Positions 5,795 through 48,324 of a stretch of 64,000 nt of DNA are shown here, one piece after another. The notes beneath the pieces were generated by a model. That model was not told the origin of the DNA. It was given only the letters and a program-made list of their open reading frames with translations, and ran no database searches. Made by a program: the position numbers and the translations under genes. Position 1 is the first letter of the stretch, and every line of letters begins with the position of its first letter. The stretch spans positions 25,854,001-25,918,000 of the forward strand of contig NC_086106.1 in the NCBI RefSeq assembly GCF_963921235.1. The letters are read 5' to 3'. This DNA comes from Mobula hypostoma. Lineage: Eukaryota.

Positions 5795-5809
5795 GGCGCC
5801 CTCTAGTGA
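5795..5809 (-). promoter_or_regulatory. CTCF-consensus motif directly downstream of the V RSS
   Basis: Minus strand TCACTAGAGGGCGCC matches the CTCF core consensus CCASYAGRKGGCRS. Sequence match only. Confidence 0.65.
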
Positions 5810-5847
5810 TCACGAATCCGGACCCGCGGTGTCCCTGCAATTCTGTA

Positions 5848-6275
5848 GGGTGCATTGCACAGTGGTATACACCAGAGTCTGGGACAAGAACTCCAGATAT
5901 ATATATAAATGAGCTGACTCTGCCTCTGTCTTTATCAGCTGAAAATCTCGCCCAACATTCTGGAGGTTGCTCCAGTGTTCCTGAGCCATATACCTTCAGC
6001 ATTTACTTTTCGAGATATTCCGCGGTGCTGGGTGTATCAAAAATATTTGCATTAGTTCTTGAGTAATTGCAGTTTAGTGTTATGAGCTGACTTTCGTCAG
6101 CCGTGAATTTGGTAGCATGCTACATCGCTGAACCTTTCTCGTTCCTGCATTAAAGGACAAAATGCACTAATATCCCTGACTTGCACTGAACTCACGTGGC
6201 GCTCCATGGTCATATGAGCAGCGTCCTGCCTGTCAGGATGACGAATGTAATGAATACAAAACAAAGGGAGCACTT
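5848..6275 (-). pseudogene. TCR-type V pseudogene, family B (leader 6230-6275, V exon 5848-6144)
   Basis: Translates to ...TLNCNY...DSGVYHCAM. ATG is mutated to AAG, the donor reads GCAGGA, there is an in-frame TAG and frameshifts. RSS heptamer is TACAGAA (5841-5847) and the nonamer is lost. Confidence 0.88.
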
Positions 6276-7514
6276 TCTTCTGACTTCCGCCTCGATAGGA
6301 CGGCAGATAACTTCCAAGAAATTATCGCTATGTTAGGGAGTAAAATCGCATCAAAAATAGATTTCACAGAGCCCTGCTCAACGATTGGTAGCTAAAACGG
6401 AGCCGAGGCCCTATGAATACTATAAACAATCGGATTTGGTTGATTTCCGCCCTCTGCCTTTTTCCCCCACACTATAAACCTTTCTCCGCATCTCTCTCTC
6501 TCATTTTCTCTCCTCTCTCTCCCCTCCCTATCTCTCTCCATCTTTCTATTTATCTACCGTTCTCTCTTTCTCGCTCTTTCACTCTGTCTTCCTTTCTCAC
6601 TCACTTGCTCTCTCCCCACCTTCTTCTCTCTCACTTCAGCTCTCTTTCCGAACATTGATTTCTATTTATCTACCTCAATTTTTCGCTCCATGAATTCATT
6701 CTCGGTTGCTTTGCCTTTCCTCTCTCCCTTCTGACACCATGTCACTCCATATTATCCAGCGTATTACTGAGTCATCCACCATGTTATGACTTTCTATTGG
6801 TCCTGCTATTTATCTTATCAATAGCCTTTTAAGTCATTGACGTAATACCTTTCAATTTATTAGCCTCCCGCTGGATATTGCTTTTCAATAGCACACCAAA
6901 TATTTACTCCCTAATATTTTTCCATAAGTGAGCCAATCTCCTATCCATTGTAATAGACTCATTTGAGAATTTGTTTTCTGCAGTTTCTTCGGCCTCACAT
7001 CTTAATGATTCCCTTCTCAGAATATAAAGACCCTGTAAGTACAGTTCACCGTGTACCAGGACGGAAATCTTGCGAAGTGTTCAAAGTTGTGACCGTGTAT
7101 TGTAGACAACGAGGGGAAATGACTATTCAGATGTCTCAAAATCTTTTAACGTCTTATTTGTACCAACAAACTGAATTTAAGCCGAGATGCCTGCGATCCT
7201 GAGAGCGGCCAGATTAAGGCGAACGAGTGAACCTCCCTCGTTTTTGCGTCCATTCTTGATTCGCTCTCTAGTCAGCGGTCTGTACACCTGCTAGCGACTG
7301 TATTTCCGTGTCGATTATTCACCTTTAATGGTGCGTGCTGCAAGGCAGAAAGATACAATGAAGAGTCCGACGCAAGTGCCTCGGTCTTTTATCATTGAAC
7401 CATCTTCGTTCACTGCGCAAAGCAGTGGTAAACAGCAAAACATATTTTCTTTGTTTCTATGTTTCTAAGTTTCTATATCTTGACGTGCTCATGTGTCTCG
7501 CTTCCGACGGGATC

Positions 7515-7693
7515 CGAAAGACCATAAGACCATAAGATATAGGGACAGAAGTACGTCATTCTGCCCATCGAGTCTGCTCCGCCATTCAATCATGGACTGA
7601 TCCGATTCTTCCAGTCGTCGTCATTCCTCTGCCTTCTCTCCATACCCTTTGCTGTTCATGCTAGTCAAGAACTTAGCTATCTCTGCCATAAGT
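7515..7693 (-). mobile_element. CR1 3'-end fragment with (CCATAAGA)n-type tail
   Basis: gaccataagaccataagatatagggacagaagtacgtcatt... is homologous to 58630 onward and is cut off by the hAT element. Confidence 0.7.
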
Positions 7694-10102
7694 CAGTGGT
7701 CCCCAACCACCGCGCCGCGGACTGCTATCGGGCCACAAAGCATGTGCAACCGGGCCGCGGGGAAACTATATGATTTGGCTCTAGGAAACGATGTGAGTTC
7801 GCTGCACCTTACATCATTCCCCGTCACTCCCACTATTGAACTTGAACGCACGCGAGGTCTTTATTCACGCGAGGACATCAGTTTTTCATTAACCTGCAAC
7901 TACTCGATGAGTAAAAAACAAAACGTAGCTTGAGAGATTCTTTGAAAGAGATGGTAGGTGACATAAAAGGCCTAACGATGATGATAACGCAGAGACAACT
8001 GAGGCCGAGACGGCAAAAAAAAAACGGAAAGCTTCCTTCAACAGAAAATGCGACGAGTCGTCCATAAAAAGTGGCTTATTACGACCGGTGACTCGCACGC
8101 TCCAAGCCCCCTGTGTGTGTTTTATGGAGACAAACTGTCTAATCAGACAATGAAGCCCTCAAAACTGCGACGGAACTTTGAGTCCAAGCACCCTGCACTT
8201 AAAGACAAAGCTGTTGAGTTTTTTGAGCAGAAGAAACGTGATCAAGCCGAACAGAAGCAAGGGCTGAGAACCACCACATCCACAAATGCTGCTGAACTGA
8301 GAGAGTCGTACTTAGTGGCTAGCCGTATTGCTGAGGCTAAGAAGCCTTTCACTGTTGGTGAAGAATTGATTCTGCCTGCTGCAAAGACATCTGCCGTGAA
8401 CTGTTGGGAACAGCTCTTTCAGCTACCACAGTTTCAAGGAGAATCGATGACATAGCGGAGGACATCGAAGCACAGCTATTGGAACGGCTTAACTAGTCTG
8501 GTTTCGCTACCCGAGTCAGAGTTTGCTCCAGAAAGACAGTCTACACACTGTGTCACACACAGGGAAATGCTGGCTAGCCGACAAATGTCACCTGACCTTA
8601 ACAGCGTATTGAGTGACGTTGTTGAAGTTATCAATCACATCAAAGCAAAAGCCCTGAACTCACATCTGTCTGAGCAGCTTTGCGAGGAAATGGATACAGA
8701 GCACAAACGCCTTCTCTTACACACTGAAGTCAGGTGGCTATCAAGGGGGCCAGGGTTTTCGAGATAAGAGGCCAGCTACAGAGATTTCTTTCGAGAAAAA
8801 AGTCACCACTGGCAGCACACTTCAGTGACGAGGAGTGGACAGCAAAACTCGCTTATCTGTGTGACATCTTCAACCTGCTCAATGAACTCAATTTGTCACT
8901 TCAGGGAGGATGACAACTGTCTTCAAGTTGTCAGATGAAGTATGTGCTTTCACAGCCAAACTGGAACTGTGGAGCCGGCGAGTGGACAGGGGCATATTTG
9001 ACATGTTCCCAACATTAGCTGGGAATTTGGGAGAGACTGAGGCTTAGAGCTGGTGCGTGAAAACCTATCTTCGCTGTCGACGGATTTCGAGCGTTACTTC
9101 CCAACCGCAAATGACCTAAGACGTGTGAAGGAATGGGTCAGTGACCTATTTGTGAATATCCCAGGTGAAACATCTATGTCAGCGCGAGAAGAATATCAAC
9201 TCATCGAGCTTGCAAATGACAGTGGGCTAAAAAGTATGCTTGACATTACATCTCTTCAGGCATTCAGGTTCAAAGTCAAGGTTAAATATACTGAGATAGC
9301 CGCGAAAGCACTGAAAACGTTGCTTCCATTTCCAACATCATGTCTCTTCGAAGCGGAGTTTTCTGCAAAGAATGCAATGGAAACTAAATTGCAGAATAGG
9401 CTGGACATAAGGAACCCTCTTATAATTCATTTATCACTATATTCATGCGAGAAAAATATGCGCTATGTGTTTAATATGGCACAGTAAAAAGAAAAGTTCA
9501 AAGTTTCTCGGAAGTCCCCCATCTCACGCAGACGGGAGAAGGCGGAAAACTCTCCCTGCCATACCCGACCATACTCCGAATCTGCGTCGTCCGAAAACTT
9601 CGAACTCTGATCAGCCCTCCGACACCTAGCACAGAGCACCATCTCTGCCCGAACGTTTCGACCTCAGCCTCGGTCGCCAGCAGCAGGCAAAGCCGGGGAT
9701 TTTGGGGCCTAACCTTCGGAGATTCTCGAGCGCACAGGAACAACAGCAGCGAACCAGGCATTCCAGAAATTTCTCCAGATGTTCCTCTCCTTCTCACGCC
9801 TGTCTTCATCAAATCAATATTGTCCACCGCCCCTACTTAACAGATTCAATATCATTTTCACCGGAGAGCCGCGCGCGTCGCGCTGCCATCTTCTCCTCCC
9901 GCCTGGGCGTATCAGCCACTGACTGAGCGTATTAGATTGAGTGCATTAACCACGGATAAGTGACTTAGAGTTGACTTATCACCTATATTCCGGTCGTTAT
10001 TGACGACACCGACACCCCCCCCCCCCGCCCCCCCACGGGCAGTTCGCAAGAATACTGTCAATATTAAACCGTTCCGCGGTGCAATAAAGGTTGGGGTTCC
10101 TG
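7694..10102 (+). mobile_element. hAT DNA transposon, Buster/Charlie (ZBED5/SCAND3-like) family, degenerate
   Basis: Left TIR CAGTGGTCCCCAACC at 7694 and imperfect right TIR GGTTGGGGTTCCTG at 10089-10102. Transposase fragments GDSHAPSPLCV..LSNQTMKPSKLRRNFESKHP, LLLHTEVRWLSRG and LLPFPTSCLFEAEFS. No matching 8-bp TSD found. Confidence 0.85.
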
Positions 10103-10169
10103 CTCCAACAAACCCAAAGTTTGTGAGTGGCGCCGGATACTTAAGGGTTGAGTCAAGAAACTGCAAGGG

Positions 10170-11790: not shown

Positions 11791-11942
11791 GATGACACCG
11801 TCAGTCCCATAAGCAAAGCAGCTGTCCAACTAACTGAAGAATGTAGTCTGTAATTTCTCCCCTTTCCCCTGGAGTTTCACCTTCTTAACTCATTCACGTG
11901 ATAGTGGTGGATCTGTGTTTGCGCCCCGGTTTTCCGGCAAAG

Positions 11943-11957
11943 GGCTCCCTCTAGCGA
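11943..11957 (-). promoter_or_regulatory. CTCF-like motif 23 bp downstream of the RSS nonamer
   Basis: Minus strand TCGCTAGAGGGAGCC. Confidence 0.55.
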
Positions 11958-11980
11958 GCGCTCACTGCATCACGGAGGTC

Positions 11981-12019
11981 GGATATTCTCCAGAGCCGTC
12001 ATCGCCTTGCAACACTGTG
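11981..12019 (-). other. 23-RSS (CACAGTG-23-AGAATATCC)
   Basis: Perfect heptamer, exact 23-bp spacer, nonamer diverged from ACAAAAACC. Confidence 0.85.
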
Positions 12020-14277
12020 GGCATCATGGCACAAAGATAAACGGTAGAGTCCGACACAAAAGCACCAGAGATGTTCAAATGGGCTGCCTTGCTGTCACGC
12101 TGCCAACCAGCGGTAAACCTCGCTGGTTTCCGTTCCATCGTGCCAGTGCTATATACCGTCAGCAAATATCTTGAAGATTCCACGCGATGCTGAACGTACC
12201 AAACAATAGACTGAGGATCGCCAGTGTAATTACAGTTCAGTGTTACAATTTGTTCTTCCACGATCGTTAATTCAAGAGGCCATTGCTTCGCAGAATCTTT
12301 TCCATTTGTTCCTGCAATAAAAGGACAGAATGCATGAGCATAGAAACATAGAAACATGGAAAATAGGTGCAGGAGTAGGCCATTCGACCCTTCGAGCCTG
12401 CACCGCCATTCAGTATGATTATGGCTGATCATCCAACTCAAAACCCTGTACCAGCGCTCCCTCCATACCCCTGATCCCTTCAGCCGCACGGGCCATATCT
12501 TACTCCCTCTTAAATATAGCCAATGAACTGGCTTCAACTGTTTCCTGCGGCAGAGAATTCCACAGATTCACCACTATCTGTGTGAAGAAGTTTTTCATAA
12601 TCTCGGTCCTAAATGGCTTCCCCTTTATCCTCAAACTGTGATCCCTGGTTCTGGACTTCCCCAACATCGGGAACAAACTTCCTGCATTTAGCCTGTCCAA
12701 TCCCTTTAGGATTTTATACGTTTCAATCAGATCCCCCCCCCGCCAACCTTCTAAATTCCAACGAGTATGAGCCTAGTTCATCCAGTCTTTCATCATATGA
12801 AAGTCCTGCCATCCCAGGAATCAATCTGGTGAATCTTCTTTGTACTCCCTCTATGGCAAGGATGTCTTTCCTCAGTTTAGGGGACCAAAACTGCACACAA
12901 TACTGCAGGTGTGGTCTCAGCAAGGCCTTGTAAACTGCAGTGGTATCTCCCTGTTCCTGTACTCGAATCCTCTTGCTATAAATGCCAGCATACCATTCTC
13001 CTTTTTCATCGCCTGCTGTACCTGCATGCCCACTTTCAATGACGGGTGTATAATGACACCCAGGTCTCGTTGCACCTCCCCTTTTCCTAATCGACCACCA
13101 TTCAGATAATAATCTGTTTTCCTGTTTTTGCCACCAAAGTGGATAACTTCACATTTATCCACATTAAATTGCATCTGCCATGAATTTGCCCACTCACCTA
13201 ACCTATCCAAGTCATCCTGCATCCTCTTAGCATCCTCCTCACAGCTACCCCTGCCGCCCAGCTTTGTGTCATCAAACTTGGAGATGCTGCATTTAATTCC
13301 CTCGTTTAAGTCATTAATATATATGGTAACCAAATAGGGTCCCAGCACTGAGCCTTGCGGTACCCCACTAGTCACTGCCTAGTGAAAAGGTCCTATTTAT
13401 TCCCACTCTTTGTTTCCTGTTTGCCAAACAATTCTCTATCCACATCAATACCCTACCCCCAATACCGTGTGCTTTAAGTTTGCACACTAATCTCCTGTGT
13501 GGGACCTTGTCAAAAGCCTTTTGAAAATCCAAATATACCACATCCACTGGTTCTCCCCTATCCACTCTACTACTCACATCCTCAAAAAATTCTATGAGAT
13601 TCGGCAGACATGATTTTCCTTTCACAAATCCATGCTGACTTTGTCCGATATTTTCACCGCTTTCTAATTGTGCTGTTATCACATCTTTGATAACTGACTC
13701 TAGCAGTTTCCCCACCACCGATGTTAGGCTAACCAGTCTATAATTCCCTGGTTTCTCTCTCCCTCCTTTTTTTAAAAAGTGAGGTTACATTAGCCACCCT
13801 CCAATCCTCAGGAACTAGTCCAGAATCTAAAGAGTTTTGAAAAAATATCACTAATGCATCCACTATTTCTTGGGCTACTTCCTTAAGCACACTGGGATAC
13901 AGACCATCTGGCCCTGGGGATTTATCTGCCTTTAATCCCTTCAATTTACCTAACACCACTTCCCTACTAACATGTATTTCCCTCAGTACCACCATCTCAC
14001 TTGACCCTGTGTCCCCTACTATTTCCGGAAGATTATTTATGTCCTCCTTAGTGAAGACAGAACCAAAGTAATTATTCAATTGGTCTGCCATGTCCTTGCT
14101 CCCCATAATCAATTCACCTGTAGGGGACCTACTTTTGTCTTAACCAATCTTTTTCTTTTCTCATATCTATAAAAGCTCGGAATTTATTCGCACATACGGA
14201 ACAGATAGAGGCCGTTACCGTGGAGACTCACCGGGCATCATAGTCAATATAATCAGCAGATAACACAGAGAATTCAT
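12020..14277 (-). CDS. TCR alpha/delta-like V gene, potentially functional; leader exon 14232-14277, V exon 12020-12311, intron expanded by a CR1 insertion
   Basis: Leader MNSLCYLLIILTMMP-G with GTGAGT donor and TTGCAG acceptor. Open V exon GTNGKDSAKQWPLELTIVEEQIVTLNCNYTGDPQSIVWYVQHRVESSRYLLTVYS...DSTVYLCAMMP keeps both conserved Cys and the Trp. Confidence 0.8.
12339..14177 (-). mobile_element. 5'-truncated CR1 LINE (RT and 3' end) inserted in the V leader intron
   Basis: (CATAGAAA)n tail at 12339. RT motifs YLDFQKAFDKVPH and GVPQGSVLGP. Near-identical to 53500-55360. Confidence 0.93.
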
Positions 14278-18189: not shown

Positions 18190-18333
18190 NNNNNNNNNNN
18201 NNNNNNNNNNNNNNNNNNNNNNNNNNNNNNNNNNNNNNNNNNNNNNNNNNNNNNNNNNNNNNNNNNNNNNNNNNNNNNNNNNNNNNNNNNNNNNNNNNNN
18301 NNNNNNNNNNNNNNNNNNNNNNNNNNNNNNNNN
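18190..18333. other. Assembly gap (144 N)
   Basis: Run of N next to CT-rich sequence. Confidence 0.99.
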
Positions 18334-19501
18334 GATTCCCTGTGGATGCTCCTAATTGGCAAACATTTATCCACGCATCAGTATATTCCTCCTTGAACGA
18401 AACTGCTACTAGGGATTCAGGGTGTATTGTAGCTCTTGTCGCCCGGCCCCTTCACCCCCTTATAACCTCTGAGCAGGGAGGTTGTGTTGTCTCATGGCTC
18501 CTGAGGACGGGAAGTTGTTCGACGTTGAGCAGGATGCGGTGGGCCGCGGGCGCCCTTCATTCCAAGCGTCCATTGTACAGAAGATCTGTTCTGTAGAGAT
18601 CGGTAATCGCAATGCATTAGGGAGAGCTGATCATGCAAATATACATAGCGGAAACAGGCACAAAACCACTGAAGATATTTGAATCTAAGCAGTGGCCATT
18701 TCATGTTAAACAACCTGAAATATTCACCGATGTAGTTTGCTACTGAGTTTCACTCTCATAAGTCAACCACGTAATTCCCGCAAATATTTGGGTGCGCCAC
18801 TTCGACTTTTCTAGCACGACCCGCCCTCTAGCGACGGTTTACTGCATCACACCTCACACATACAGTATGTACTTTAAACATAAATTCACTTTGATCAATG
18901 AACATTTCTCACAGCCCGGTAATACAACGGCCAAAATACTATAAGCATTCTCTAGCACACTAAACATCTGCAGGATCTGTCGCATTATCTAAATACTCAG
19001 TATAAATCATAAGTAGCCACTGCAACATCCTTAATTTCAGCAGCATGTCACCTGCTGTTCTTTGTCTAACTAAAAACAACTATTTGCCCACGCTCTGTTT
19101 TCCCTTAGTATACCACTGTCCTACTTAACTATATTGCAGTTCCACTCCATCCTTTTGCTTCTCCATGCAGAACCTCGAACAATGTGGCCAAAGACAACCT
19201 CATTCTAGGTTGCCAATCGCGACATGCCGTTGCAGCAAAGAGGGTGGGTGAATGCACATTGCCGTATCCCGGAAATACATTATAAAGATCCAGTTTGGGT
19301 TTGCGTTGTAGTCATGAACTGTTCCATTACCTTCGGCGCCTTGTGTTGGTGATTGCAGCCCTCTTAAGTAGGGCGCGTGACTACGACTATTTTCAGTGTG
19401 CGCACTCCCAATTTACCGGCAAAAGACGCCTTCCAGTGAGATCTTTTGCTTTATACAGAACCAATTATTGTTAGAAACCCGCCTTCTTCATGCAACAGAT
19501 G

Positions 19502-20911: not shown

Positions 20912-20954
<43 letters not shown>

Positions 20955-23150: not shown

Positions 23151-24256
23151 AAACAGTAATCACCAGTAATCGGTTGTTCTCTCTATATGTCTTTTCAATC
23201 GGAAGGAAAACACTAAAGTGGAAAAGCAGTTTCTCGTGTGCACAAGTATACACTCTACCCGATTATAAGAGTATTGAACTGTAGGATGAAATTGAATCTC
23301 AATCCCAATCCACCAGGATCTGATCGTATTCTTTATTTGCTGGCTGTGCAGCATTTTTATATGTCTATACACTTTTTTTTTAATATTGTGTTATTATTTT
23401 ACTTTGTACTACCGCGATAAGCAGTGCAGTGAGATCATCTGCAATAACCGAATCGATGCAATCATGCGACAATAATAAACACATTCCGTTCGCAATCTAG
23501 GTACGTACACCAAAATACTCCATGTGGTGATTATATTGGATCCGTTAAATCTAGTTGGGAAAACAGATTATACAAGTTATCACTCTGTTGTGATCCCATT
23601 CCCTCTCTTCCTCTCTCGGTCTTTCATACTGAATATGACGTCAAAATATGAGTCTTAGCTTAGTATGTGGCCGCCTATATGTATTTTAACCATAAAATTA
23701 CTTTCAACACTGAACCTCTTTCACACAGCATGGGAATACACCGACGAACATAGTATCTGCATTCTCTGTTGCGCGAAACATACACAGGTTTTGCCGCATT
23801 ATCTATATTGTCAGTATAAACCATGAGTAGCTGTTGTATCTTCGTTAATTTCAGTGGGCTTTAATGTCTGGGTTGCGGTAGCATGCCACTTTGAATTCTT
23901 TGTTATTCTGGAAAGCACGAATTTTGCGACCCTCTGGTTTCCATTGACCACTTTAAATATATTCCGGTGCCACTCCGTCCGTATTATTTTTCCTTGCAAA
24001 CAAGCGAACAAAGTGGCCAAAGACAATGTCAGTCAAGGCTGTCCATCGTTATATACCCTTACAGTAAAAGAAGAAGATCGAATGCATATTGTGTTATTCA
24101 GGAAATGAATTGCAAATTTCCAGTTCGGTTGCGCCATGTAATCAGAAACTGTTCCTTCAGCTTCGGCGCCTTGTGCTGCTGCTTACAGCGCTCTTCCGCA
24201 GAGCACGTGACCATGGATGATTTCCGGGTGCGCCCCTTCCAGATTCGCCGCGAACA

Positions 24257-24271
24257 GGCGCCCTCCTGTGA
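24257..24271 (-). promoter_or_regulatory. CTCF-like motif 24 bp downstream of the nonamer
   Basis: Minus strand TCACAGGAGGGCGCC. Confidence 0.55.
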
Positions 24272-24295
24272 GAGCTTTGTGCATCATAAAGGACT

Positions 24296-24334
24296 GTTTT
24301 TTGTCCGGACCCGCCGTCTCCATACAACAATGTG
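24296..24334 (-). other. 23-RSS (CACATTG-23-ACAAAAAAC)
   Basis: CAC intact, exact 23-bp spacer, near-consensus nonamer. Confidence 0.9.
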
Positions 24335-25007: not shown

Positions 25008-25054
<47 letters not shown>

Positions 25055-31945: not shown

Positions 31946-34054
31946 TCATATCAACAAACCATATCAGACTCTCCTTTGTTAGTGTGAGAGACAGAACGCC
32001 CGTGGGACAAAGAAATGATGCAGTAAACAGCTGTTTCTTTCCTGTACTGTAGGCCAAGCCTCTTCTTGTACGTTTGCGGTGACTTCGAGGGTGGTTGGTG
32101 GTGGAAAAGCTGATGCTTTATATTGCAATAAGTGAGAGAAGTAGAAGCTGGTTAGGTTAATGCTGCTGGCCGCAGATTTTGCGAGCGACGTGACAGTGGG
32201 CGTTCAGGTTCTTACCTTTTTTTCTGATATTGTTGCTTTGGGTTTTTGTTCTGTATTAAGGATATTTGTAGAGACTATATATTCAGGTTATGTATTGTGT
32301 CCATTCTCTGACTTTAAACGTAACCGTTTAAGCAAGCTGGGCATTCTTTTCGCAGTACTCTGTTATATCTGACAACAGCAAAATATATAATAAACGTAAA
32401 CCAGTTTGGGGTATCTGTAAGCGTCTGTAAAGTGAAGGAATACATCAGTTTGTCTTTCATTAGTTCATAAAATATCGGTTGAGCGGGGAGACGGAGGTAG
32501 TTGTGCACTGCAGAGCGCCTATCGTTGAACCCTGGCGATATCTGGCGTTATTTCACCATGGATCCGGTTGGATTCCGACAATTTCGATGCTGTCAACAAA
32601 TACTTCTGTGCTCAGTATCCGCTTTTTGTGCGTTAGCAAGTACTATTCTGCCCGCAAAAGACCTCCTGGGTAACAAGTGCCCGTGATCGGAGGATCACTG
32701 AGTGTGGACGTTAAGAGGAATGTGCGACAATTGGACCGATAAATCAGTTTACCATAAGACCATAAGAATCGAGGAACTGAATTTGGCCACTTGACCTATC
32801 GAGTCTGCTCCAACATTTCAGATGAGACAGTGTGGTAATGGAATTCTTCGACATAGTAAACATTTAATTAATATAAGAGGTTCAAAAAATCGAAATATAC
32901 CTTTGGAAACAGAAGCTATCACTGTGTGCTCCCGCGGTAGTAATGTGGCGTTCCCTCTCTGTGTCTCTTCGATCGTGAGGTTATTCAAAGTTCTAAAAGT
33001 AGCAATAGATTATTTCCTTTGCAAGAGTATTGAACGCTAGGATAAAATTGAATCTCAATCCCATCCACCTCGGTATGTCCTTGCTCTTTAATTCCTGCCT
33101 GCGCTGCATTTTATACGGTTATACAATTTATTTTCACGTTATTTTATTGTTTAACTTTGTACTACCTCCACAAGGGGTGTATTGAATTCATCTGTAAAAA
33201 CCGAATCGAAGCAATCATGTGACAATAATAAACAATTTTCTATCCAATTTAGATATGTAGCGAACATCACTTGGCGATAAAATTAGATTAGTTAAATCTG
33301 GTTGGGAAACTACATTATTCAAGCAATCACCCTTTTGTAATCCCATTCCCTCTCTCCTCCCTCGCTCTCTTTCAGACTGCAAATGCCTTCAAAAAATATG
33401 AATCTCGGGGTAGTATGCGATCACGTATATGTAGTTTAATCATAAATTCACTTTAAGTATTGAACCTCTTTCTCACAGCAACGACCAAAATAGTGTCTGC
33501 ATTCTCTATCACGCTAAGCATCCGCAGGTTGTGTCGCATCATCTAAATTCTCAAAATACACAGTAAGTAGTTTTTCCCAACATCCTGACTTTCTTAACGT
33601 GCCACTTGCAATTCTTCATCAATCGGAAAACCACAAATTTTCTCACCATCTGGTGTCCTTTAGTCAGCCATTGTGCCATTTAAATATTTCCCGGATCCAC
33701 TCCGTTCTCATTATTTCTCACTGCAGACACTCAATCAAAGTGCCATAAGACAATGTCAGGCAAGGGTCTCAATGGTGATATGCCTTTGCAGCAACAGAGC
33801 GTGGCTGAATGCACATTCCGATATCCCGGAAAGTTGTGTAGTTCCAATTTGGGTCCGCGTTGTAAATAGCAACAGTTCTTTTAGAGTCGGCGTCTTGCGC
33901 TGCTGATTACAGCGCTCTTAGGTAGGATACGTGACCATGGCTGATGGATGCGCCCCTTCGAGTTTCGTCGCAAAATGACGCCCTCCAGAGAAAGCTTTTA
34001 GCATTATAGAGGACCAGTTTTTGTTTGCATCCGCCGTCGCCGTACAACAGTGTG

Positions 34055-35725: not shown

Positions 35726-35854
35726 NNNNNNNNNNNNNNNNNNNNNNNNNNNNNNNNNNNNNNNNNNNNNNNNNNNNNNNNNNNNNNNNNNNNNNNNNNN
35801 NNNNNNNNNNNNNNNNNNNNNNNNNNNNNNNNNNNNNNNNNNNNNNNNNNNNNN
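35726..35854. other. Assembly gap (129 N)
   Basis: Run of N in pyrimidine-rich sequence. Confidence 0.99.
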
Positions 35855-37859
35855 TCTGTTTTTCTTTTGCCCCTCTCAATTTAACTTTTCTGGTTCTTTA
35901 CCGTCCTACCTATTTCTTTTTCCGTGTACATCACTCGCTTCCTCTACTCCATCACTCCCAAGTTCTTAGGAACTGGACGGTTGCTCAAGTGGAAAAGTGA
36001 CATTCACCATGAGCGGGATAACTACCCTGTGTGAATTACTGATACTAATAAATTTCAATATTTCGTTGCACATCGTTGCACTGTAGCAGAGCAGGGAACA
36101 TAATACAGATCATGATATATGCTATTATGTGGGCATTTCTTTTAGGTAATGCACTTCTAATCGACTGCATTTTGCATGAGCGAGTTTGAGTCCCACACTT
36201 GCTGACTGAGGTAATTTCAAATAAGATTGGACGGTACGGTGTGATTTTATTAAGACTCAAATGAATGAAAGTTTGAATCACAAAATCAAACGATTCGTGA
36301 AATGTACAAATAACAACGTATTACTGAAACAGTTACTGGACATAACTAGAAATACTTAGTCTGCCTGGAAACGACTTTAGAGATTAACGGTTCAGACCTT
36401 TCAGGAGACTGTCAACTAATTTGGGCAGGGTCACCAAAGTGATTGTTTCATGCATAACACAACGTTAAAATAATAGTGGTAAAATATCAAGTTAGAAGTT
36501 TGAAAACAGATGCTTTCATTTTGTTTTCCTTACTTCGACAGTAAACTGAACTTTATGTGTGTTCTCTCTTCCAGTCGTGCGGGTAATACATTATGTACAG
36601 GGATAGTTTCTGTTCTGCGTACATCAGAGTATGGGCTGCAGGATGAGATAGTCTGTTAACCCCCAATGCACTTGTTCTGGCCTTACTCTTAGCTGCCATT
36701 CATTATTTGGTTATTTAGGCTGTTACTTTCTTCTGCATTTCAAAAGTCTTATACTATCTTTACTATCTCATCACACAGTGCAATGAATTGATCTGTATGA
36801 TCAGAACCAATTCAACATTTCACAGTGTGTTGGCACATTTCGCTATTTTATAAATGCAACTCTAACTTCGATAATTAACAAGTCATTGGAAGGACGCCGT
36901 TGTCATTGACATATCTATTCAGTATACATTAAACAATCTTGTTTTGTCCTACCTTGTCACTTCTATTCCTTCCTCACAGATTGTGAACACATCTATCACA
37001 ATTGTATCCGTTATATGTATCATACTATAGATCCATCGGTCGTGTGACTTATGTAAATAATCGATAAAATTAAAAGTATTTGTCACAACATCCTATCTTT
37101 CAGTGGCATACCACTTGTTATGCATAGTCAATCCGAGGAACACCGATTTTTCCCCACTCTCTGATTTTCGTTTTTGAATCAATGTCAATAGATTCCACAT
37201 GAACTTTCGCCTTGACCTGTAGCATTTGATGTTGCACCGCATTCAATGTTTTCTATCTCCAAGTTCGACGATAACCTCACTGTTGTTTCCTCAAGGATCC
37301 CTAACAAACTGGCAAAAAAACAACGTTGAATATGGTTGACAACCGTGATATGGCATCCCATGCAAAAGAGGATATTTAGATACCGTAGATATACAAGAAA
37401 TGCAATGTAATGCTTTCATTTGAGTTAAATGCAAGAATAGTACTCAGGTTTGACAGCTTTTCCGACCACGCGACGCCCCTTTAAGTCGACCACGTAACCT
37501 TACTAATATCTGTGTCCGCCCCTTGCATTTAAATGGCAAAGGCAAAACAGGCCCTCCGCTGACATTTGTTGAATTACCCAGAACTGTTTTATTTTTGTTT
37601 TTGTCGGTACCCGAGGTTTCCCTGCAAGACCGTGGTTCCTCATAACACAGAGGAACATGGTGCAGTTCCAACAAAGAGCTCCGAGATATTCTTGGCGTTA
37701 ACACCAACCGGACATTATGGAGAGCGCTCGAAATTTTCCTGAAATTATTTGAGAGATTCCCCGTAATGCTGATTGTACTAAAAGTAGTTACGCCAGAGCT
37801 AGTGTTGTGTTCTCTCTTTCTCAAACTTTAATTGAAGGGAACCCTACATCACTATTTTT

Positions 37860-40350: not shown

Positions 40351-40628
40351 AGGTGGACGTTAAGCGAACCCACATTCGCTAGACAGCTGTTATCGATCGC
40401 GCCATGTAAAGTCCCAGTCTGGGTGCGCGTTGTAATCAGGAACAGTTCCTTTAGCTGCGGCGCCCTGTGCTACTGATTGCAGCTCTCTGAAGTAAGGCAG
40501 GAAACCATGGCTGATTTCCGGGTGCGCCCTTCCCACTTTCTGGGCAAAAAGACGCCCTCCACGGAGAGCATTTTGCATTATTCAGGACCGGTTTCTTGTC
40601 CGGACCGCCATCTGCATTCAACTTTATG

Positions 40629-41053: not shown

Positions 41054-42412
41054 GATGTCTAATTTCCTGCTGGATCGACCGGCTGACTCCTTCCAGGTCG
41101 TAAATATCACTTAGCAGTTGCTGTTGTGTGGGATCGCTGAAGCGGTACCTTTTACTATGTGTTACACCGTGGACGTTTCCCTGGTTAAAGAATTCGCTAA
41201 CACTAAGAACCGAGCCTTTCTCAGCGCTATTCAGAATCCGCTTTGTTTCCATTCGTCCTTCTGGTTTTTTCTTCTCTCATTTATGGTCCCGCGTCTACAC
41301 CCCGCACTATCCCGTCTCTCCGTATCTCTTTCTCTCTGTCTCACGCTCTCTCTTTCTTAGTGTGCCCAACTGCCTACTCCCCCTGTTCTCTGCATAATCA
41401 CAGCATATTCACGTATTTCTCGATGTGTAATCGAAATCAGTTATGAATGTTCACGTGGTCGCTTCGTCGTATTCGTCAATATTACGCCGGAAGTATTTAT
41501 TTATTTGTTTATTTATTTAGTTATTTAGAGTTATATCCACAATTGTCCCTTAAATCAACATTTATCAGTCTTCCAGCATTGAACTAGTTATTCAATGTCA
41601 GCAAGTGTTCATCTGGTTCTTCCCTAGTCTTTGTTTGCCGTTAGGGAGCCAATCTCCTATCCACGCTAATAGACTCCTCACAGCAACCTTTATGCAGCCA
41701 GCACTCCTTTCGTTAAAAAAAAACTCACGTCTGGCAGTCCCGGAATCTTTGTTTTCTGTTAGGGAACAAAAGACTGAACATTCTACAAAAGAAGGACAAA
41801 ATGACTGAACATCCATTTCTCCTGCTGCACCCGCAAGACACACACTGTATAAATCATCAATGTAGATTTTAGCTGGTGGTGGTATAATCGTTTAGTAAAA
41901 AGGTCAGTCCACTTGGGATTCATTTTCAATGCGAAAGATGAACATCTATTTATCTCCACTTTGAAGAAGCTAATGTTAATAGACGCCGCATGAAATTTAT
42001 CTTCATCTAAGCATTTAGTGTTACAGCTAATAGGATGCTGTCTGGTCATATACACCCTCAGTATTTCCAGATTGCACTCATCTTCACTGCTAATCCCTCA
42101 AGGTGGTGCAAAATGAAGTCCACAAAAAAAAATAGCCACAAGATATTGTTATAGGCAATAAAGAGAGAGATGGTCACCGAGATGTAGTGGAAATGTTCCG
42201 GAAAACCGCCACGATATGTCTAGGTAAAGCTAAATTTAAGAAGTGTTCCACAAAGTTGGGCGCATTTTGCTGCTGAAAGCCGCGTTTTAAGTTGACCACG
42301 TGATCCTCATGCTCTGCGCGTGCAGCTGTTCCCGTTTCCCAGCAAAAGTCCCCCTCTAGTGATCACACAAGGCTGGATGTTCCCGTAACCGCTGTCGCAC
42401 TGCAACACTGAG

Positions 42413-42995: not shown

Positions 42996-43033
<38 letters not shown>

Positions 43034-44209: not shown

Positions 44210-46501
44210 GGTGTCTAATCTTTGTCTCGATCGAACGGCAGATTTATTCCAGGACGTAATTAACAATCAATAGATATTGTAGTGTGAGATCGTTTCAGCA
44301 CTACCTTCACTGACTGGAAGAACCGAAACTTTTCCGAGAACCGAACAGAATCAGCTTCGTTTCCATTCGTCATTGTGCTCGTTTCTCCGTTCGTTCAAGG
44401 GCTCATGAACACCACCCCACCCATCTCTCTCTCTCTCGATGCCAATGGGAGAGATGGAGATATTACTGCCGATTCCCAGCTGGGAATACCGGTATAAAAA
44501 GAATGCTTCATACTGACTGTAACATCGAAATAGTGACTGCTGATTCCTCTCTCGCTTTTGAACGAGCCATATCAGTCTTTCATTTATTAGTGAGAGAGAG
44601 AGAATGCCTGTAATACGATGAAATGTTGCAGTAAACAGCTACCTTTTGTTGTACTGTAGACCAAGCTCCTCTTTGTGTTTGCGGTTGTTTTGATGGTGGT
44701 TGGTAGTGGAAATGTTGATACTATATGCTAGAATAAGTGAGAGATGCAGAAGCTGGTCAGGTTAATTCTGCTTGCCGCTGATTGAGCGACTGATATGGCA
44801 GGGGACTTTTTAGGTTCTTATCTTTTTTCTGATATTGATGCTTGTGTTATTGTTCTTTTTTAAGGATGTCTGTGGAGACTGTAAATTTCAGGTTGTGTAT
44901 TTTGTACCTCTCTGATTTTAAGCGTAACTATTGAAACAAGCTGGGCATTATTTTCGCTGTACCCGGGTACAACTGACAACAACAGATATATAATATACAT
45001 AAACCAGTTTGATGTAACTGTGAGCGTCTGCAAAGTGAAGGAATATATCAGGCTGTCCTTCATTAGTTCACAGAACATGGGTTGAGCAGGAAAGTGGCGG
45101 GGTTGGTGGCTGCAGAGCGCCTATCATGACACCCTGGCGATATCTGGTGTCATGTCCCAGAGATTCGGTTCAATTCTGACCTTTCGATGCTGTCAGCGGA
45201 TACTTACGTGCTTAGTTTCCACGATTCCCGAGTTGCTGTATTTTCCACTGCCCGAAAAAGGCGCTCTGGGTTGCACGTGCTCGTGATCGGGGATCAGTGA
45301 ATATACCTATTAAGAGGAATTTGCGAAATTGGACAGATAAATCAGTTGACGATAAGACCATTAGATATAGGAACTGAAGTAGGCCATTTGGCTTGTCGTG
45401 TCAGCTCCGCCATTTCAGAGGAGACGATGTCGTGATGGAAATATTTGATACACTAAACATATAATTAAAATCAGATTTTCAAAAAGACGAAATATACCTT
45501 TGGAAACAGATGCCATCAGTTTGTGCTCCTTCGACTGTAACCGGACGTTCTCACTGTTTGTCTCTTCCATCGGTGGGAAAACACAAATTTCTCAAACCAA
45601 GTTCCCACGAAACAAGAATAGACTATTCCCATTTGCAAGAGTATTAAACTGTAGCATGAATCATAATCTTGGTATGACCTATCTCTTTACTTCTTGCCTG
45701 TGCTGCATTTTGAGACGTCTGTTACAGTTTAGTTTTGTATCCTTTTATTGTTTTACTTTGTACTATCTCGATCAGCTGTGTCGTGAATTCATCTGAATAA
45801 GCAGAATCAATGCAATAATGCAACAATAATTTTAAAAAAATGTTTTCAATTTAGGTATGTAGCAAAATGCTACAAGTGGTGATAACATCAGATCCGTTAA
45901 ATCTGGTTGGGAAACCAGATTATACAAGCAATCAATCTGTTGTGATCCCATTCCCGCTCTCTTCCTTCGTTCGCTTTTATACTGAAAATGCCTTCAAAAA
46001 TATGAATCTCGGGGTAGTATGCGGTCAGGTATATATACTTTAATCATAAATTTAATTCAAACATTGAACCTTTTTCTCACAGCTTGGAAACGCAACGACC
46101 AAAATAGTATTTGCATTCTCCAATACGCGAAGCATCCGTACGTTCTGTCGAATTATCTAAATGCTCAGTATAAATCATAAGTACCTGCTGCAACATCCTT
46201 AATTTCAGTAGCATGTCACTTGCAATTATTTGTCAATTCAAGAACGACCAATTTTCACACCATCTGCTTTCCTTTAGTCAACCATAGTGCCATTTAAATA
46301 TATCCCGGTTCCACTGCGTCCTCATTATTTCACACTGAAGATACTTGAACACAGGGGCTAAAGACGATTTCAAACAAGGCTGTCAAGCGTGATATGCCGT
46401 CGCAGCAAAAGATGGTGGGTGATTGCACATTGCCGTATCCCAGAAAGTTATAAAGCTCAGTTTCTGTCCGCGTTGTAATCAGGAACTGCTCCTTCAGCTT
46501 C

Positions 46502-46608
46502 GGCGCCTTCTGCTGCTGAATGCAGTGGTCTGAAGTAGGGCACGTGACTGTGACTGATTTCCGGGCGCGCCCTCTGCAGATTCCTCGGAAAAAGGCGCCC
46601 TCCAGTGA
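46502..46608 (-). promoter_or_regulatory. Cluster of three co-oriented CTCF-like motifs downstream of the RSS
   Basis: Minus strand TCACTGGAGGGCGCC (46594-46608), TCTGCAGAGGGCGC (46567-46580) and GCAGCAGAAGGCGCC (46502-46516). Confidence 0.55.
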
Positions 46609-46632
46609 GAGCTTTTTGCAATATACAGAACC

Positions 46633-46671
46633 AGTTTTTGCACGGACCCGCCGGCCCCATATAACAGTGTG
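46633..46671 (-). other. 23-RSS (CACACTG-23-GCAAAAACT)
   Basis: CAC intact, exact 23-bp spacer, A-tract nonamer. Confidence 0.9.
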
Positions 46672-47094
46672 GTACCCATTGCACAGAGATACATGGCAGA
46701 GTCCGACACAAGAGCTTCACGGATATTCAATTGAGACGTCTTGCTGCCTTTCTGTGAAGTACCGGTAATCCTCTCTGAATACCGCTGCGTTTCTCCTGTG
46801 CTATATAACTTCAGCAGATAATTTGGAGGTCGTCCAGTATGTTGAATGTACCAAAAGATATATGTACTAGCATCGGTGTAACTACAGTTCAGTGTTATAT
46901 TCTGTCCTTCGTCAGTCGTTACATCGGGAGGATCCTGCGTCACTGAATATTGCCCACTCGTTCCTGCAAGAAAGGACAGAACACATCAACAACGCTGGCT
47001 TGTATCGAATGCCGGGCAAACTCGCTAGCCAGCTTCGCTGAGACTCACCAGGCAGCAGAGCCAGTGCAATCAGCAATGAACAGAGGGAAATCAT
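46672..47094 (-). CDS. TCR alpha/delta-like V gene, family A, apparently intact (leader 47049-47094, 85-bp intron, V exon 46672-46963)
   Basis: MISLCSLLIALALLP-GTSGQYSVTQDPPDVTTDEGQNITLNCSYTDASTYIFWYIQHTGRPPNYLLKLYSTGETQRYSERITGTSQKGSKTSQLNIREALVSDSAMYLCAMGT. Confidence 0.88.
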
Positions 47095-47343
47095 GCTGTC
47101 TAATTTCTGGCTGAATCGAACGGCAGATTCCTTCCAGGGCGTTATTATCACAACAGATATTGTGGTAGTAGATTGTTTCAGCGATATATTTCACCTTGTG
47201 TAAAACCGGAGGTGTTGCTCTGGTTAAAAGATTGGCTGACAGAAAGAACCGAACCTTCCTGAGCACCAATCAGAAGCTGCTTTGTATCCAACGTCATTCT
47301 GCTTGTTTCTTCGCTCTTACAATGTCCGGTGTTCATCCCCCAA

Positions 47344-47396
<53 letters not shown>

Positions 47397-47749
47397 TCTG
47401 CTTAATCACAACATATTCACATACCTATCAATGCTGAATAAACATAAGCAAGACTTTTCACGAGTTCGCTCAAAATTAACAATATCCCGCTGGAAGTAGT
47501 TGATTACTGTATTTGTTTTGTTGGTTAGTCATTTGAAGATATATCCTACAGTAGATCCTTAAATCAATATGTTTCAATCTTCCTGCATTGAACTACTTAT
47601 TCAAAGGTCATCAATAGTTGATCTAGATATTTCCTAATCTTTGTTTGCTGCGAGGGTGCCAATTTCTTATCTACGTCAATAGACTCCCGGCAGCACTTTC
47701 TGTGTAGCGATCCACCCTCTGGTCAAAGCGCTAGTTATCCACTTTATTT

Positions 47750-47751
47750 AT

Positions 47752-47820
<69 letters not shown>
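47750..47820. repeat. (CT)n microsatellite; similar tracts at about 5270, 6480, 20180, 20810, 25010, 28170, 34730, 42990 and 47345
   Basis: Read directly from the sequence. Confidence 0.95.
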
Positions 47821-47822
<2 letters not shown>

Positions 47823-48324
47823 ACATCTTTTTACAAGCTGCCAGCTTTCTGCAAAAAAAAAAATCAATTGTTCTCCCCTTTTAAGAAGCTAATGTTAATA
47901 GAGTGAACCTGAAATTTATCTTCATCAGAAGGATTTACATGACAGCTTAGCCGATGCTGTCTAGTCACATGCACCCTCAGCATCTCCAGGTTGCACTCAT
48001 CTTCACTGTTAATCGCTCAGGCCAGTCAAAAATTATGTCCAGCCAAATGTGAACCGCACAATGTTGTTATAGGCAGCAGACACACAATATTGTTATGGAC
48101 ACTGAGATATAGTGAAAATGTTTCGGAAAAATACCAGGGTAATCCGAGGTAAAGCAGAATTCAAGAAGTGTTCCTCAAAGTTTGGCGAATGTCGCTGCTA
48201 AATGCAGCATTTTAAGTCGACCACTTGATCCTTATGGTTTCTGTGTGCGGCTGTTCCAGTCTCCCAGCTAAGGCGCCCTCTAGTGATCACGACACCGGAC
48301 CCGCTGTACCCCTGCAGTTCTGTA

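What the first reader, a model, noticed from the sequence alone, without database searches (positions are those of the whole stretch)
5795..48286. A co-oriented CTCF motif sits just downstream of nearly every V RSS: candidate loop-extrusion/RAG-scanning architecture in a cartilaginous-fish TCR locus
Seen: a 15-bp motif with minus-strand consensus TCACTAGAGGGCGCC (variants TCACTGGAGGGCGCC, TCGCTAGAGGGAGCC, TCACAGGAGGGCGCC). It occurs at 5795, 11943, 18820, 19425, 24257, 27489, 33977, 40551, 42348, 46594 and 48272. All copies point the same way as V transcription and, where an RSS is present, lie 0-25 bp beyond the nonamer position. The motif is shared by V families whose flanks otherwise do not align. 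Established: this matches the CTCF core (CCASYAGRKGGCRS). RSS-adjacent CTCF elements of D-proximal mouse Igh V genes promote their use during cohesin-driven RAG scanning, whereas mouse Tcra/d V-associated sites are described mainly at promoters. Inference: RSS-coupled CTCF anchoring may be an ancestral jawed-vertebrate V-gene design. I know of no description in elasmobranchs but cannot check the literature.
Basis: partly seen in the sequence, partly recalled or inferred. Interest (0 to 1): 0.88.

Follow-up and report, generated by a model that had tools for sequence, protein, structure and literature searches.

The report
CTCF-like box behind ray TCR V segments
Every T-cell-receptor V segment in this ray window has a conserved, same-direction CTCF-like box just past its recombination signal. 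The box recurs in skate, whale shark and some bony fishes, but only a quarter of the copies here look like strong CTCF sites, and binding is untested.

Summary
All 11 reported copies exist, all on the minus strand, which is the V sense strand. I found a 12th copy at 37548 and two decayed relics at 7260 and 49730. The box sits 12 bp (family B) or 23-25 bp (families A and C) past the nonamer of a 23-RSS.

First, the flanks do align across V families. The box is the peak of a ~110-150 bp conserved module that also holds a fixed-offset CACGTG E-box. Second, the CTCF match is strong in only 3 of 12 copies, all on pseudogene V's with damaged RSSs. It is borderline in 3 and poor in 6. Family A carries G at a near-invariant A.

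Support for a functional element:
- The box is the most conserved 15-bp window across families (rank 1 of 794), level with the best-conserved coding parts.
- The identical 15-mer lies 24 bp past a V RSS in little skate.
- A same-orientation CTCF motif lies 23-47 bp past some TCR-alpha-type V RSSs in whale shark, pufferfish, paddlefish and Danionella. None was found in the sampled toad, skink or bamboo shark V's.

This most resembles the RSS-associated CTCF elements of mammalian IgH. CTCF occupancy and any role in RAG scanning remain untested. First readers of this scan noted the same arrangement in at least eight other windows of this genome; none of those notes has been checked.

The parts
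5683..5816 (-). Module copy, family B. Box at 5795-5809 is TCACTAGAGGGCGCC (PWM 20.1). The V at 5853-6143 is a pseudogene and the RSS nonamer is deleted.
11817..11976 (-). Module copy, family C. Box at 11943-11957 is TCGCTAGAGGGAGCC (PWM 10.4), 23 bp past the nonamer. RSS at 11981-12019 has heptamer CACAGTG.
12022..12312 (-). Intact V exon ending ...YLCAMM, TCR-alpha type.
18698..18852 (-). Module copy behind a decayed V end. Box at 18820-18834 is TCGCTAGAGGGCGGG (PWM 10.5).
19311..19457 (-). Module copy, family A. Box at 19425-19439 is TCACTGGAAGGCGTC (PWM -0.6). The V at 19504-19823 is a B/A hybrid pseudogene with a degenerate heptamer.
24140..24290 (-). Module copy, family A. Box at 24257-24271 is TCACAGGAGGGCGCC (PWM 7.4), 24 bp past the nonamer. 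E-box CACGTG at 24204-24209.
24296..24334 (-). 23-RSS of the intact V: heptamer CACATTG, 23-bp spacer, nonamer ACAAAAAAC.
24337..24624 (-). Intact V exon ending ...YLCAMS. Best solved-structure matches are TCR alpha V domains (E 1e-13 to 1e-17).
27376..27510 (-). Module copy, family B. Box at 27489-27503 is TCACTAGAGGGCGCC (PWM 17.3), 12 bp past nonamer ACAAACTCC. The V is a pseudogene with TGA at the Trp41 codon.
33866..34010 (-). Module copy, family A. Box at 33977-33991 is TCTCTGGAGGGCGTC (PWM 5.8), 24 bp past the nonamer. The V at 34057-34355 is frameshifted.
37478..37577 (-). Box at 37548-37562 is TCAGCGGAGGGCCTG (PWM -1.1), 33 bp past nonamer ACAAAAACA.
40434..40584 (-). Module copy, family A. 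Box at 40551-40565 is TCCGTGGAGGGCGTC (PWM -1.1). The E-box is lost and the V at 40631-40906 is a pseudogene.
42235..42369 (-). Module copy, family B. Box at 42348-42362 is TCACTAGAGGGGGAC (PWM 7.5). The V 3' end and heptamer region are deleted.
46477..46627 (-). Module copy, family A. Box at 46594-46608 is TCACTGGAGGGCGCC (PWM 9.0), 24 bp past the nonamer. Two further CTCF-like boxes lie at 46565-46583 (10.3) and 46501-46519 (14.4). RSS at 46633-46671.
46677..46964 (-). Intact V exon ending ...YLCAMG.
48160..48291 (-). Module copy, family B, a recent duplicate of the 5795 unit. Box at 48272-48286 is TCACTAGAGGGCGCC (PWM 17.3). The nonamer is deleted.
7260..7274 (-). Decayed relic of the box (TGACTAGAGAGCGAA) behind an old V-end remnant at 7305-7379.
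49730..49744 (-). Decayed relic of the box behind a V-end remnant at 49774-49869, paralogous to the 7260 relic.
18190..18333 (.). Assembly gap in CT-rich DNA. It interrupts no V, RSS or module. Continuity across it is not testable here.
35726..35854 (.). Assembly gap in CT-rich DNA. It interrupts no V, RSS or module. Continuity across it is not testable here.

Best explanation
The 15-bp box is the core of an old CTCF-binding element. It belongs to a ~110-150 bp non-coding module that is inherited with each TCR-alpha/delta-type V unit and sits directly 3' of the V 23-RSS.

The box always lies on the V sense strand. The 3' (GGCGC) end of the motif, where the CTCF N-terminus would sit, therefore faces the side on which the RSS opens, toward the D/J-C end.

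**Shown from sequence**
- The box and its fixed spacing and orientation.
- Its embedding in a module with a CACGTG E-box about 45 bp further on.
- Its top-ranked conservation across V families.
- Its presence in skate, and a positional counterpart in whale shark and some ray-finned fishes.

**Inferred**
- Consensus copies (TCACTAGAGGGCGCC) bind CTCF with high affinity.
- Family A copies, with G at the near-invariant A, bind weakly or not at all.
- Bound CTCF stalls cohesin that extrudes chromatin from the recombination centre. This would hold or expose the neighbouring RSS, as shown for the RSS-adjacent elements of proximal mouse VH genes.
- The E-box factor (USF/TFE type) may help keep the spot accessible.

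In this window the element looks partly eroded. It is best kept on dead V's and weaker on the three intact V's.
For: - **Occurrence:** 10 copies within 3 mismatches, all on one strand, against about 1 expected. Profile search finds 12 module copies, each directly behind a V-end/RSS match.
- **Spacing:** fixed linkers of 12 bp or 23-25 bp.
- **CTCF match:** 13 of 14 positions of CCASYAGRKGGCRS in three copies, which score 17-20 of 27.6 bits. The consensus is quoted in PMC6746451.
- **Conservation across families:** identity 0.80, rank 1 of 794 sliding windows. V-exon windows average 0.60 with a maximum of 0.79, and the flank beyond +150 is 0.2-0.45.
- **Close relatives:** no majority difference falls in the box, the E-box core or box 3 in contigs of three related species. 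The module has 7 differences in 150 bp and the distal flank 12 in 147 bp.
- **Not a repeat:** coverage depth of the module tracks V-exon depth, not transposon depth.
- **Little skate:** 3 of 3 V's carry the box at +24 or +31 bp (PWM 16.6 and 17.5). One has the identical 15-mer and the same linker as ray copy 11943. Module HMM hits reach E 7e-9 to 5e-6.
- **Whale shark:** a 'CAMQP' V has CACACCAGAAGGCGC 23 bp past its nonamer in the same orientation.
- **Ray-finned fishes:** pufferfish 7 of 9 V's (CCGCTAGAGGGCGA, 18.5 bits, +28), paddlefish 1 of 4 (+47) and Danionella 1 of 13 (+30), all in the same orientation.
- **Known mechanism:** RSS-adjacent CTCF sites drive use of proximal mouse VH genes, and all V-region sites point toward D-J-C (PMC6746451, PMC5859386, PMC10390877).
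Against: - Only 3 of 12 copies are strong CTCF matches, and two of those three are recent duplicates of each other.
- All three strong copies sit on pseudogene V's with defective RSSs.
- The intact V's have boxes of 10.4, 7.4 and 9.0 bits, and three copies score below 0.
- Family A has G at the position that is A in 93% of sites in the matrix.
- Within families the box is not more conserved than the flank.
- The footprint in close relatives is not significant on its own. About 1 difference is expected in 15 bp and 0 were seen.
- The window as a whole is not enriched for the loose CTCF consensus.
- The sampled bamboo shark (2 V's), toad (12 V's) and skink (8 V's) have none, and most Danionella V's lack it.
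- No occupancy, contact or V-usage data exist.
Confidence: 0.5

Rival explanations
1. Passive hitch-hiking. The box is simply part of the V flank that is copied with each duplication. It once may have been a CTCF site but has no present function in this array.
For: - Within families A and B, the box (identity 0.83 and 0.93) is no better kept than many flank windows.
- The best copies sit on dead V's, and the old relics at 7260 and 49730 have decayed together with their V's.
- Elasmobranch DNA evolves slowly. LINE copies are 82-85% identical between skate and ray, so some cross-species alignability is expected without selection.
Against: - The box ranks first of 794 windows across families whose V exons are only about 35-55% identical in protein.
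- Sequence beyond +150 no longer aligns across families.
- The identical 15-mer is present in skate although a transposon has inserted 25 bp after it.
- Canonical CTCF motifs recur at the same place and orientation in distant fishes.
Confidence: 0.2
2. The module is a V-flank enhancer or accessibility element read by other factors. Candidates are an E-box bHLH-ZIP factor such as USF/TFE, GC-box proteins and ETS proteins. It would be comparable to the V8E elements downstream of mouse VH8 RSSs, and the CTCF likeness of the box would be secondary.
For: - CACGTG lies at a fixed offset of 57-66 bp in 7 of 12 copies, with one-base variants in 4 more.
- Family A has conserved GGGGCGCAC and CCGGAAAT boxes, and family B has CAGCTG.
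- CpG observed/expected is 0.94-0.95 in the module against 0.6-0.8 around it.
- Family A keeps the GGAGGGCG half of the box while losing the CTCF-critical A.
- Open-chromatin enhancer elements directly downstream of VH8 RSSs are documented (PMC10390877).
Against: - The ancestral form of the box is a 13-of-14 match to the CTCF consensus.
- The skate module keeps the box but not the E-box.
- The fish counterparts share only the CTCF motif, not the rest of the module.
Confidence: 0.2
3. The CTCF-like box was spread by a transposable element, like the SINE-borne CTCF sites of mammals.
For: The window is rich in LINE fragments, and transposon-borne CTCF sites are known in mammals (general knowledge).
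Against: - Module depth in four runs equals V-exon depth. It is 3-4 orders of magnitude below the depth of the true repeat at 22000-23200.
- All 12 copies lie directly behind a V RSS, and none lies elsewhere in 64 kb.
- The module has no terminal repeats or tRNA-like part.
Confidence: 0.02

Closest known systems
RSS-associated CTCF-binding elements of D-proximal VH genes in mouse and human IgH (Ciccone et al. 2019, PMC6746451; Jain et al. 2018, as cited in PMC10390877)
   Same: - A CTCF-core motif at a short fixed distance past the V 23-RSS: about 17-19 bp there, 12 or 23-25 bp here.
- One orientation throughout the V array, pointing with the V toward D-J-C.
- The motif is better conserved than the surrounding sequence.
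- The elements also occur on pseudogene V's.
   Different: - The locus type is TCR-alpha/delta-type V's, not VH.
- The lineage is a batoid fish.
- The sub-consensus is TCACTAGAGGGCGC, against GACCAGCAGGGGGC in mouse VH.
- Most copies here have drifted from the consensus.
- The box is joined to an E-box module.
- Binding and function are shown in mouse and only inferred here.
CTCF sites of the mouse Tcra/Tcrd V region (Loguercio et al. 2018, PMC5859386)
   Same: The same type of locus. Most sites (129 of 144) point toward J-C.
   Different: The mouse sites lie mostly upstream of V promoters or between genes, not next to the RSS. Here no strong site was seen at V promoters.
V8E elements immediately downstream of mouse VH8 RSSs (Hill et al. 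2023, PMC10390877)
   Same: A conserved, family-specific regulatory stretch that starts right after the V RSS.
   Different: V8E is defined by open chromatin and enhancer marks and works together with PAIR elements. No chromatin data exist here, and no sequence relationship was tested.
Chicken beta-globin 5'HS4 insulator (CTCF site FII, CCGCTAGGGGGCAG, plus a USF site; FII sequence quoted in PMC6746451, USF part from general knowledge)
   Same: A CTCF core of the C(C/T)(A/G)CTAG type combined with a nearby USF-type E-box.
   Different: The context is unrelated. The resemblance is only a lead, and barrier activity was not tested.

Membership tests
RSS-associated V-gene CTCF-binding element (IgH type) | Sequence matches the CTCF core consensus or PWM | tested here: inconclusive
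   Three copies are strong (at most 1 mismatch to CCASYAGRKGGCRS; 17-20 bits). Three are borderline (9.0-10.5 bits). Six are weak or absent (7.5 down to -1.1 bits)..
RSS-associated V-gene CTCF-binding element (IgH type) | Short, fixed distance downstream of the V RSS nonamer | tested here: met
   12 bp in family B, 23-25 bp in families A and C, and 33 bp in one copy. Skate +24 and +31, whale shark +23, pufferfish +28.
RSS-associated V-gene CTCF-binding element (IgH type) | Uniform orientation, co-directional with the V and facing D/J-C | tested here: inconclusive
All 12 copies are on the V sense strand. The D/J-C end is outside the window.
RSS-associated V-gene CTCF-binding element (IgH type) | Motif conserved more than the neighbouring flank | tested here: met
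   Across families the box ranks 1 of 794 windows, and the identical 15-mer is present in skate. Within families it is not above the flank.
RSS-associated V-gene CTCF-binding element (IgH type) | CTCF and cohesin occupancy in developing lymphocytes | not testable with these tools
   No ChIP, CUT&Tag or ATAC runs were seen among the runs listed.
RSS-associated V-gene CTCF-binding element (IgH type) | Loss of the site lowers use of the adjacent V | not testable with these tools
   This needs genetics or repertoire data.
Transposon-borne CTCF site | Copy number far above that of the host gene, and copies independent of V segments | tested here: not met
   Module depth equals V-exon depth, while the true repeats in the same stretch are 1,000 to 10,000 times deeper. 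No module copy lies away from a V RSS.
TCR alpha/delta-type V segment with 23-RSS | V-domain exon ending in YxC, followed by heptamer, 23-bp spacer and nonamer; the V is closest to TCR alpha V domains | tested here: met
   The best PDB matches are TCR alpha V domains.

The most novel reading that the evidence does not exclude
A J-facing CTCF-binding element placed 20-50 bp past the V 23-RSS is an ancestral feature of jawed-vertebrate V units.

It would survive in TCR-alpha/delta V families of cartilaginous and ray-finned fishes (the 'CAM.P'-type and related V's) and in mammalian IgH proximal VH genes. It would have been lost or moved to promoters in tetrapod TCR-alpha V's.

If so, cohesin-driven presentation of RSSs to RAG would be as old as, or nearly as old as, V(D)J recombination itself.
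Probability: 0.25. Interest if true: 0.85.

Novelty: new variant of a known kind. Interest (0 to 1): 0.62.

Why it matters
RSS-adjacent CTCF elements are so far an IgH story in mammals. There they decide which proximal VH genes RAG finds during loop-extrusion scanning.

Finding the same arrangement behind TCR-alpha/delta-type V's would have two consequences. The arrangement occurs in a ray, is shared with skate, and has counterparts in a shark and some ray-finned fishes.
- It would move the origin of this design back by hundreds of millions of years.
- It would move the design into a different receptor locus.

The cases are directly testable. One can compare consensus against family A boxes, and intact against dead V's, in thymus CTCF/cohesin profiling, 3C-type contacts and repertoire data.

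The finding also warns that motif likeness alone overstates the case. In this window most copies, including those on the usable V's, are weak matches.

Tried and rejected
1. **Word-indexed protein search with the ray V exon.** It found nothing. With the skate protein it found almost nothing. The exhaustive representative search was needed to reach other genomes.
2. **Look-ups without DNA.** Three look-ups hit proteins that have no contig on record. The white-shark locus came back without DNA. Elephant-shark proteins exist only in UniRef, so no chimaera flank could be read.
3. **First read-laying run on 6 kb.** It listed only 40 of 456 differences, and many paralogous contigs were laid. The second call, on 481 bp, gave the full list but has little power for a 15-bp box.
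They reach PWM 10.3 and 14.4 only in the 46594 unit and score 6.4 bits or less in every other unit. They were rejected as general CTCF sites.
5. **Transposon origin of the box.** Rejected on depth and distribution.
6. **CTCF 'upstream motif' reading of the TGCAGT in the linker of family C, skate and paddlefish.** The spacing (6 or 12 nt) does not fit what I recall of that motif. I did not pursue it.
7. **Whole-locus blastn of the skate locus against the window.** It was swamped by microsatellite and LINE hits. Targeted alignment replaced it.
8. **Continuity across the two gaps.** It cannot be tested with paralogues. The gaps were not filled.
9. **Module HMM on the more distant loci.** It gives no hit in whale shark, bamboo shark or skink, and it was not run on the ray-finned-fish loci. 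Homology of those counterparts with the ray module, as opposed to likeness in position, is not shown.

Full report
**What is in the window**

The window holds a one-directional array of TCR-alpha-type V segments on the minus strand.
- Translating the DNA upstream of the reported motifs gives V-domain exons that end in YLCAMS, YLCAMM or YLCAMG.
- A tblastn scan finds three intact V exons (12022-12312, 24337-24624, 46677-46964). The other V's carry stops or frameshifts.
- The intact V at 24337-24624 matches TCR alpha V domains best among solved structures (E 1e-13 to 1e-17).
- Earlier follow-up notes of this scan call the genome a devil ray. They place a TCR-delta D-J block about 5.4 Mb toward lower coordinates, which is the direction these V's point. 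I did not check either point.
- The close match of the V flanks and LINE copies to little skate fits a batoid.

**The observation**

TCACTAGAGGGCGCC, allowing up to 3 mismatches, occurs 10 times, all on the minus strand. About 1.07 matches are expected, and no shuffle of 100 reached 10. The eleventh reported copy, at 40551, has 4 mismatches.

A profile built from the aligned flanks finds 12 module copies in 64 kb, each directly behind a V-end/RSS match. This adds a copy at 37478-37577, whose box is at 37548. Two old V-end relics, at 7305-7379 and 49774-49869, are followed by a decayed box, TGACTAGAGAGCGAA. The apparently free copy at 18820 has a decayed V end upstream of it.

Spacing from the nonamer is 12 bp in family B, 23-25 bp in families A and C, and 33 bp in the 37548 copy. 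In 5795 and 48272 the nonamer itself has been deleted.

The two assembly gaps lie in CT-rich DNA and touch no V, RSS or module. No paralogue spans them, so continuity across them cannot be tested here.

**Correction 1: the flanks do align**

MAFFT aligns all families for about 110-150 bp past the box. The module contains:
- the box;
- a T-rich/GC-rich stretch;
- an E-box at a fixed offset of 57-66 bp, which is CACGTG in 7 of 12 copies, a one-base variant in 4, and lost in 1;
- a CAGCAGCA…GGCGCC stretch.

An earlier first-reader note (s1-141899) described RSS, CTCF, CTCF and E-box. I confirm the E-box. The second and third boxes look like CTCF only in the 46594 unit (10.3 and 14.4 bits) and not elsewhere.

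**Correction 2: how CTCF-like is the box?**

I used two measures. One is the published consensus CCASYAGRKGGCRS, quoted in PMC6746451.
- Only three copies are strong: 5795, 27489 and 48272. They have 1 mismatch to the consensus (3 found against 0.65 expected) and score 20.1, 17.3 and 17.3 of 27.6 bits.
- Copies 11943, 18820 and 46594 are borderline (10.4, 10.5 and 9.0 bits).
- The remaining six score from 7.5 down to -1.1.
- Family A and the 37548 copy carry G where the matrix has A in 93% of sites.
- With 2 mismatches allowed, the window as a whole is not enriched (12 found against 8.9 expected).

The three strong copies all belong to family B.
- Its V's share a TGA at the conserved Trp41 codon in three of four copies and have damaged RSSs.
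- Copies 5795 and 48272 are recent duplicates of one block.
- The three intact V's carry boxes of 10.4, 7.4 and 9.0 bits.

For the idea that the box helps the adjacent RSS, this is the wrong way round in this small sample.

**Is the box under constraint?**

Across families the 15-bp box has a mean pairwise identity of 0.80.
- That is the highest of 794 sliding windows over the V exon and 400 bp of flank.
- V-exon windows average 0.60 with a maximum of 0.79.
- The rest of the module is about 0.5-0.6.
- Beyond +150 the families no longer align, at 0.2-0.45.

Within a family the box (0.83 in A, 0.93 in B) does not stand out from the flank. CpG observed/expected is 0.94-0.95 in the module against 0.6-0.8 around it.

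I also laid contigs of three related species on 23960-24440, which gave 30 majority differences.
- None falls in the box, the E-box core or the third box.
- Seven fall in the 150-bp module and twelve in 147 bp of distal flank.
- The trend fits constraint but is not significant.

In those runs the depth over the module equals the depth over the V exon. It is thousands of times below the depth of the true repeats at 22000-23200 and 26000-26800. The box is therefore not transposon-borne.

**Other species**

An exhaustive protein search with the V exon returned multi-V gene models from other vertebrates. Their species were read from the source names, and their loci were fetched.

| Species | V's examined | Same-orientation CTCF-like motif past the RSS |
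|---|---|---|
| Little skate | 3 | All 3: a duplicated pair with CCTCTAGAGGGCGCA at +31 (17.5 bits), and one with the identical ray 15-mer at +24 (16.6 bits) |
| Whale shark | 4 | 1 ('CAMQP' V, CACACCAGAAGGCGC at +23); a paralogue has a decayed version; 2 have none |
| Bamboo shark | 2 | None |
| Pufferfish (Takifugu flavidus) | 9 | 7 (CCGCTAGAGGGCGA, 18.5 bits, +28); these are recent tandem copies of one family |
| Paddlefish | 4 | 1 ('CAMKP' V, CCGCTAGATGGCAG at +47) |
| Danionella | 13 | 1 (+30) |
| Spadefoot toad | 12 | None within 140 bp |
| Skink (Lerista) | 8 | None within 140 bp |

Further points on these loci:
- The skate copy with the identical 15-mer shares its linker (…TGCAGTGAGCGC) with ray copy 11943, and a transposon has inserted 25 bp after the box.
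- The ray module profile hits all three skate flanks (E 7e-9, 4e-8 and 5e-6).
- A 12-bit hit in a given 140-bp stretch on one strand is expected about 0.003 times, judging from the shuffles. The fish hits, all on the V strand and all at +23 to +47, are therefore not chance.
- Homology of the shark flank with the ray module is not shown, because the profile does not hit it. The profile was not run on the bony-fish loci.
- Descent from one ancestor and repeated gain therefore both stay open.

**Comparison with what is known**

RSS-associated CTCF sites at a fixed distance of about 17-19 bp past the RSS are described for D-proximal VH genes of mouse and human IgH.
- They have a locus-specific sub-consensus that is better conserved than its surroundings.
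- They have one orientation throughout (PMC6746451).
- These sites are needed for use of proximal VH genes during RAG scanning (Jain et al. 2018, as summarised in PMC10390877).

Full-text searches found no description of such elements in cartilaginous or bony fishes. What is here works like the IgH arrangement, but it sits in a different locus and lineage and is joined to an E-box module. Membership in the sense of proven CTCF binding cannot be claimed.

**Mechanism I commit to (probability about 0.5)**

The box is an old CTCF-binding element carried by the V unit and facing the D/J-C end.
- Consensus copies are bound and can stall cohesin arriving from the recombination centre.
- Family A copies are weakened.
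- The E-box factor may help accessibility.

Rivals:
- passive hitch-hiking of a former site (0.2);
- a V-flank enhancer read by other factors, with the CTCF likeness secondary (0.2);
- transposon origin (0.02).

**Earlier notes of this scan**

First readers reported the same RSS-plus-CTCF-like arrangement in at least eight other windows of this genome, over more than 1 Mb of the same array. One report is on another piece, behind CASS-type V's. None of these notes had been followed up, and I used them only as leads.

**Verdict**

The cross-species recurrence is the most interesting new fact. I class it as a new variant of a known kind, with interest 0.62.

Noticed in passing
window 5853-6143, 27560-27900, 42403-42700 (minus strand): Family B V segments share a TGA at the codon of the invariant Trp41 in three of four copies. 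The family seems to have multiplied as a pseudogene, yet it keeps the best CTCF-like boxes.
   Followed up: partly
window 19504-19823 (minus strand): Hybrid V pseudogene. A family-B-like V that runs through its FR3 (…VPDSGVYPC) is fused to the FR3 and end of a family-A V (…ALVSDSGIYLCAMS). This looks like an unequal-exchange product.
   Followed up: no
window 5683-7400 and 48160-49880: A segmental duplication about 42.5 kb apart. In both copies a family-B V unit is followed, about 1.46 kb upstream, by the same old V relic with a decayed box.
   Followed up: partly
window 29860-31098 (-), 53804-56642 (-), 12336-13320, 21150-21701: Non-LTR retrotransposon fragments with reverse-transcriptase and endonuclease domains. 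Copies are 82-85% identical to LINE copies in the little skate locus L001:9411-10401.
   Followed up: partly
window 1198-1848 (-) and 61912-62532 (+): Two ORFs with weak Pfam hits. One is a GDSL-like lipase hit (31.4 bits, just under the cutoff). The other is an ALKBH8_N hit. Both are probably parts of LINE-type elements rather than host genes.
   Followed up: no
window 22000-23200 and 26000-26800: Very high-copy repeats. Summed contig depth is 1e5-1e6 in the first and 3e3-5e4 in the second, in all three related species.
   Followed up: no
window 15110-15210 and L001:3560-3650: The same short interspersed element (…GAAGAAGGGT(C/T)TCGGCCCGAAACGT…) occurs in the ray window and in skate. In skate it is inserted 25 bp after the box of V2.
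   Followed up: no
L007 (Takifugu flavidus) about 2160-2180: One pufferfish V flank carries a second CTCF-like box (CACTAGAGGGCCAC) about 110 bp after the first.
   Followed up: no
L008 (Danionella) and L006 (paddlefish): Besides the RSS-adjacent hits, strong CTCF motifs (up to 22-24 bits) lie between V segments. Most are on the V strand and a few are on the opposite strand.
   Followed up: no
window 20186-20376, 20826-20966, 28168-28264, 47346-47399, 47745-47819: Long CT/TC microsatellites. The two assembly gaps lie in similar pyrimidine-rich DNA.
   Followed up: no
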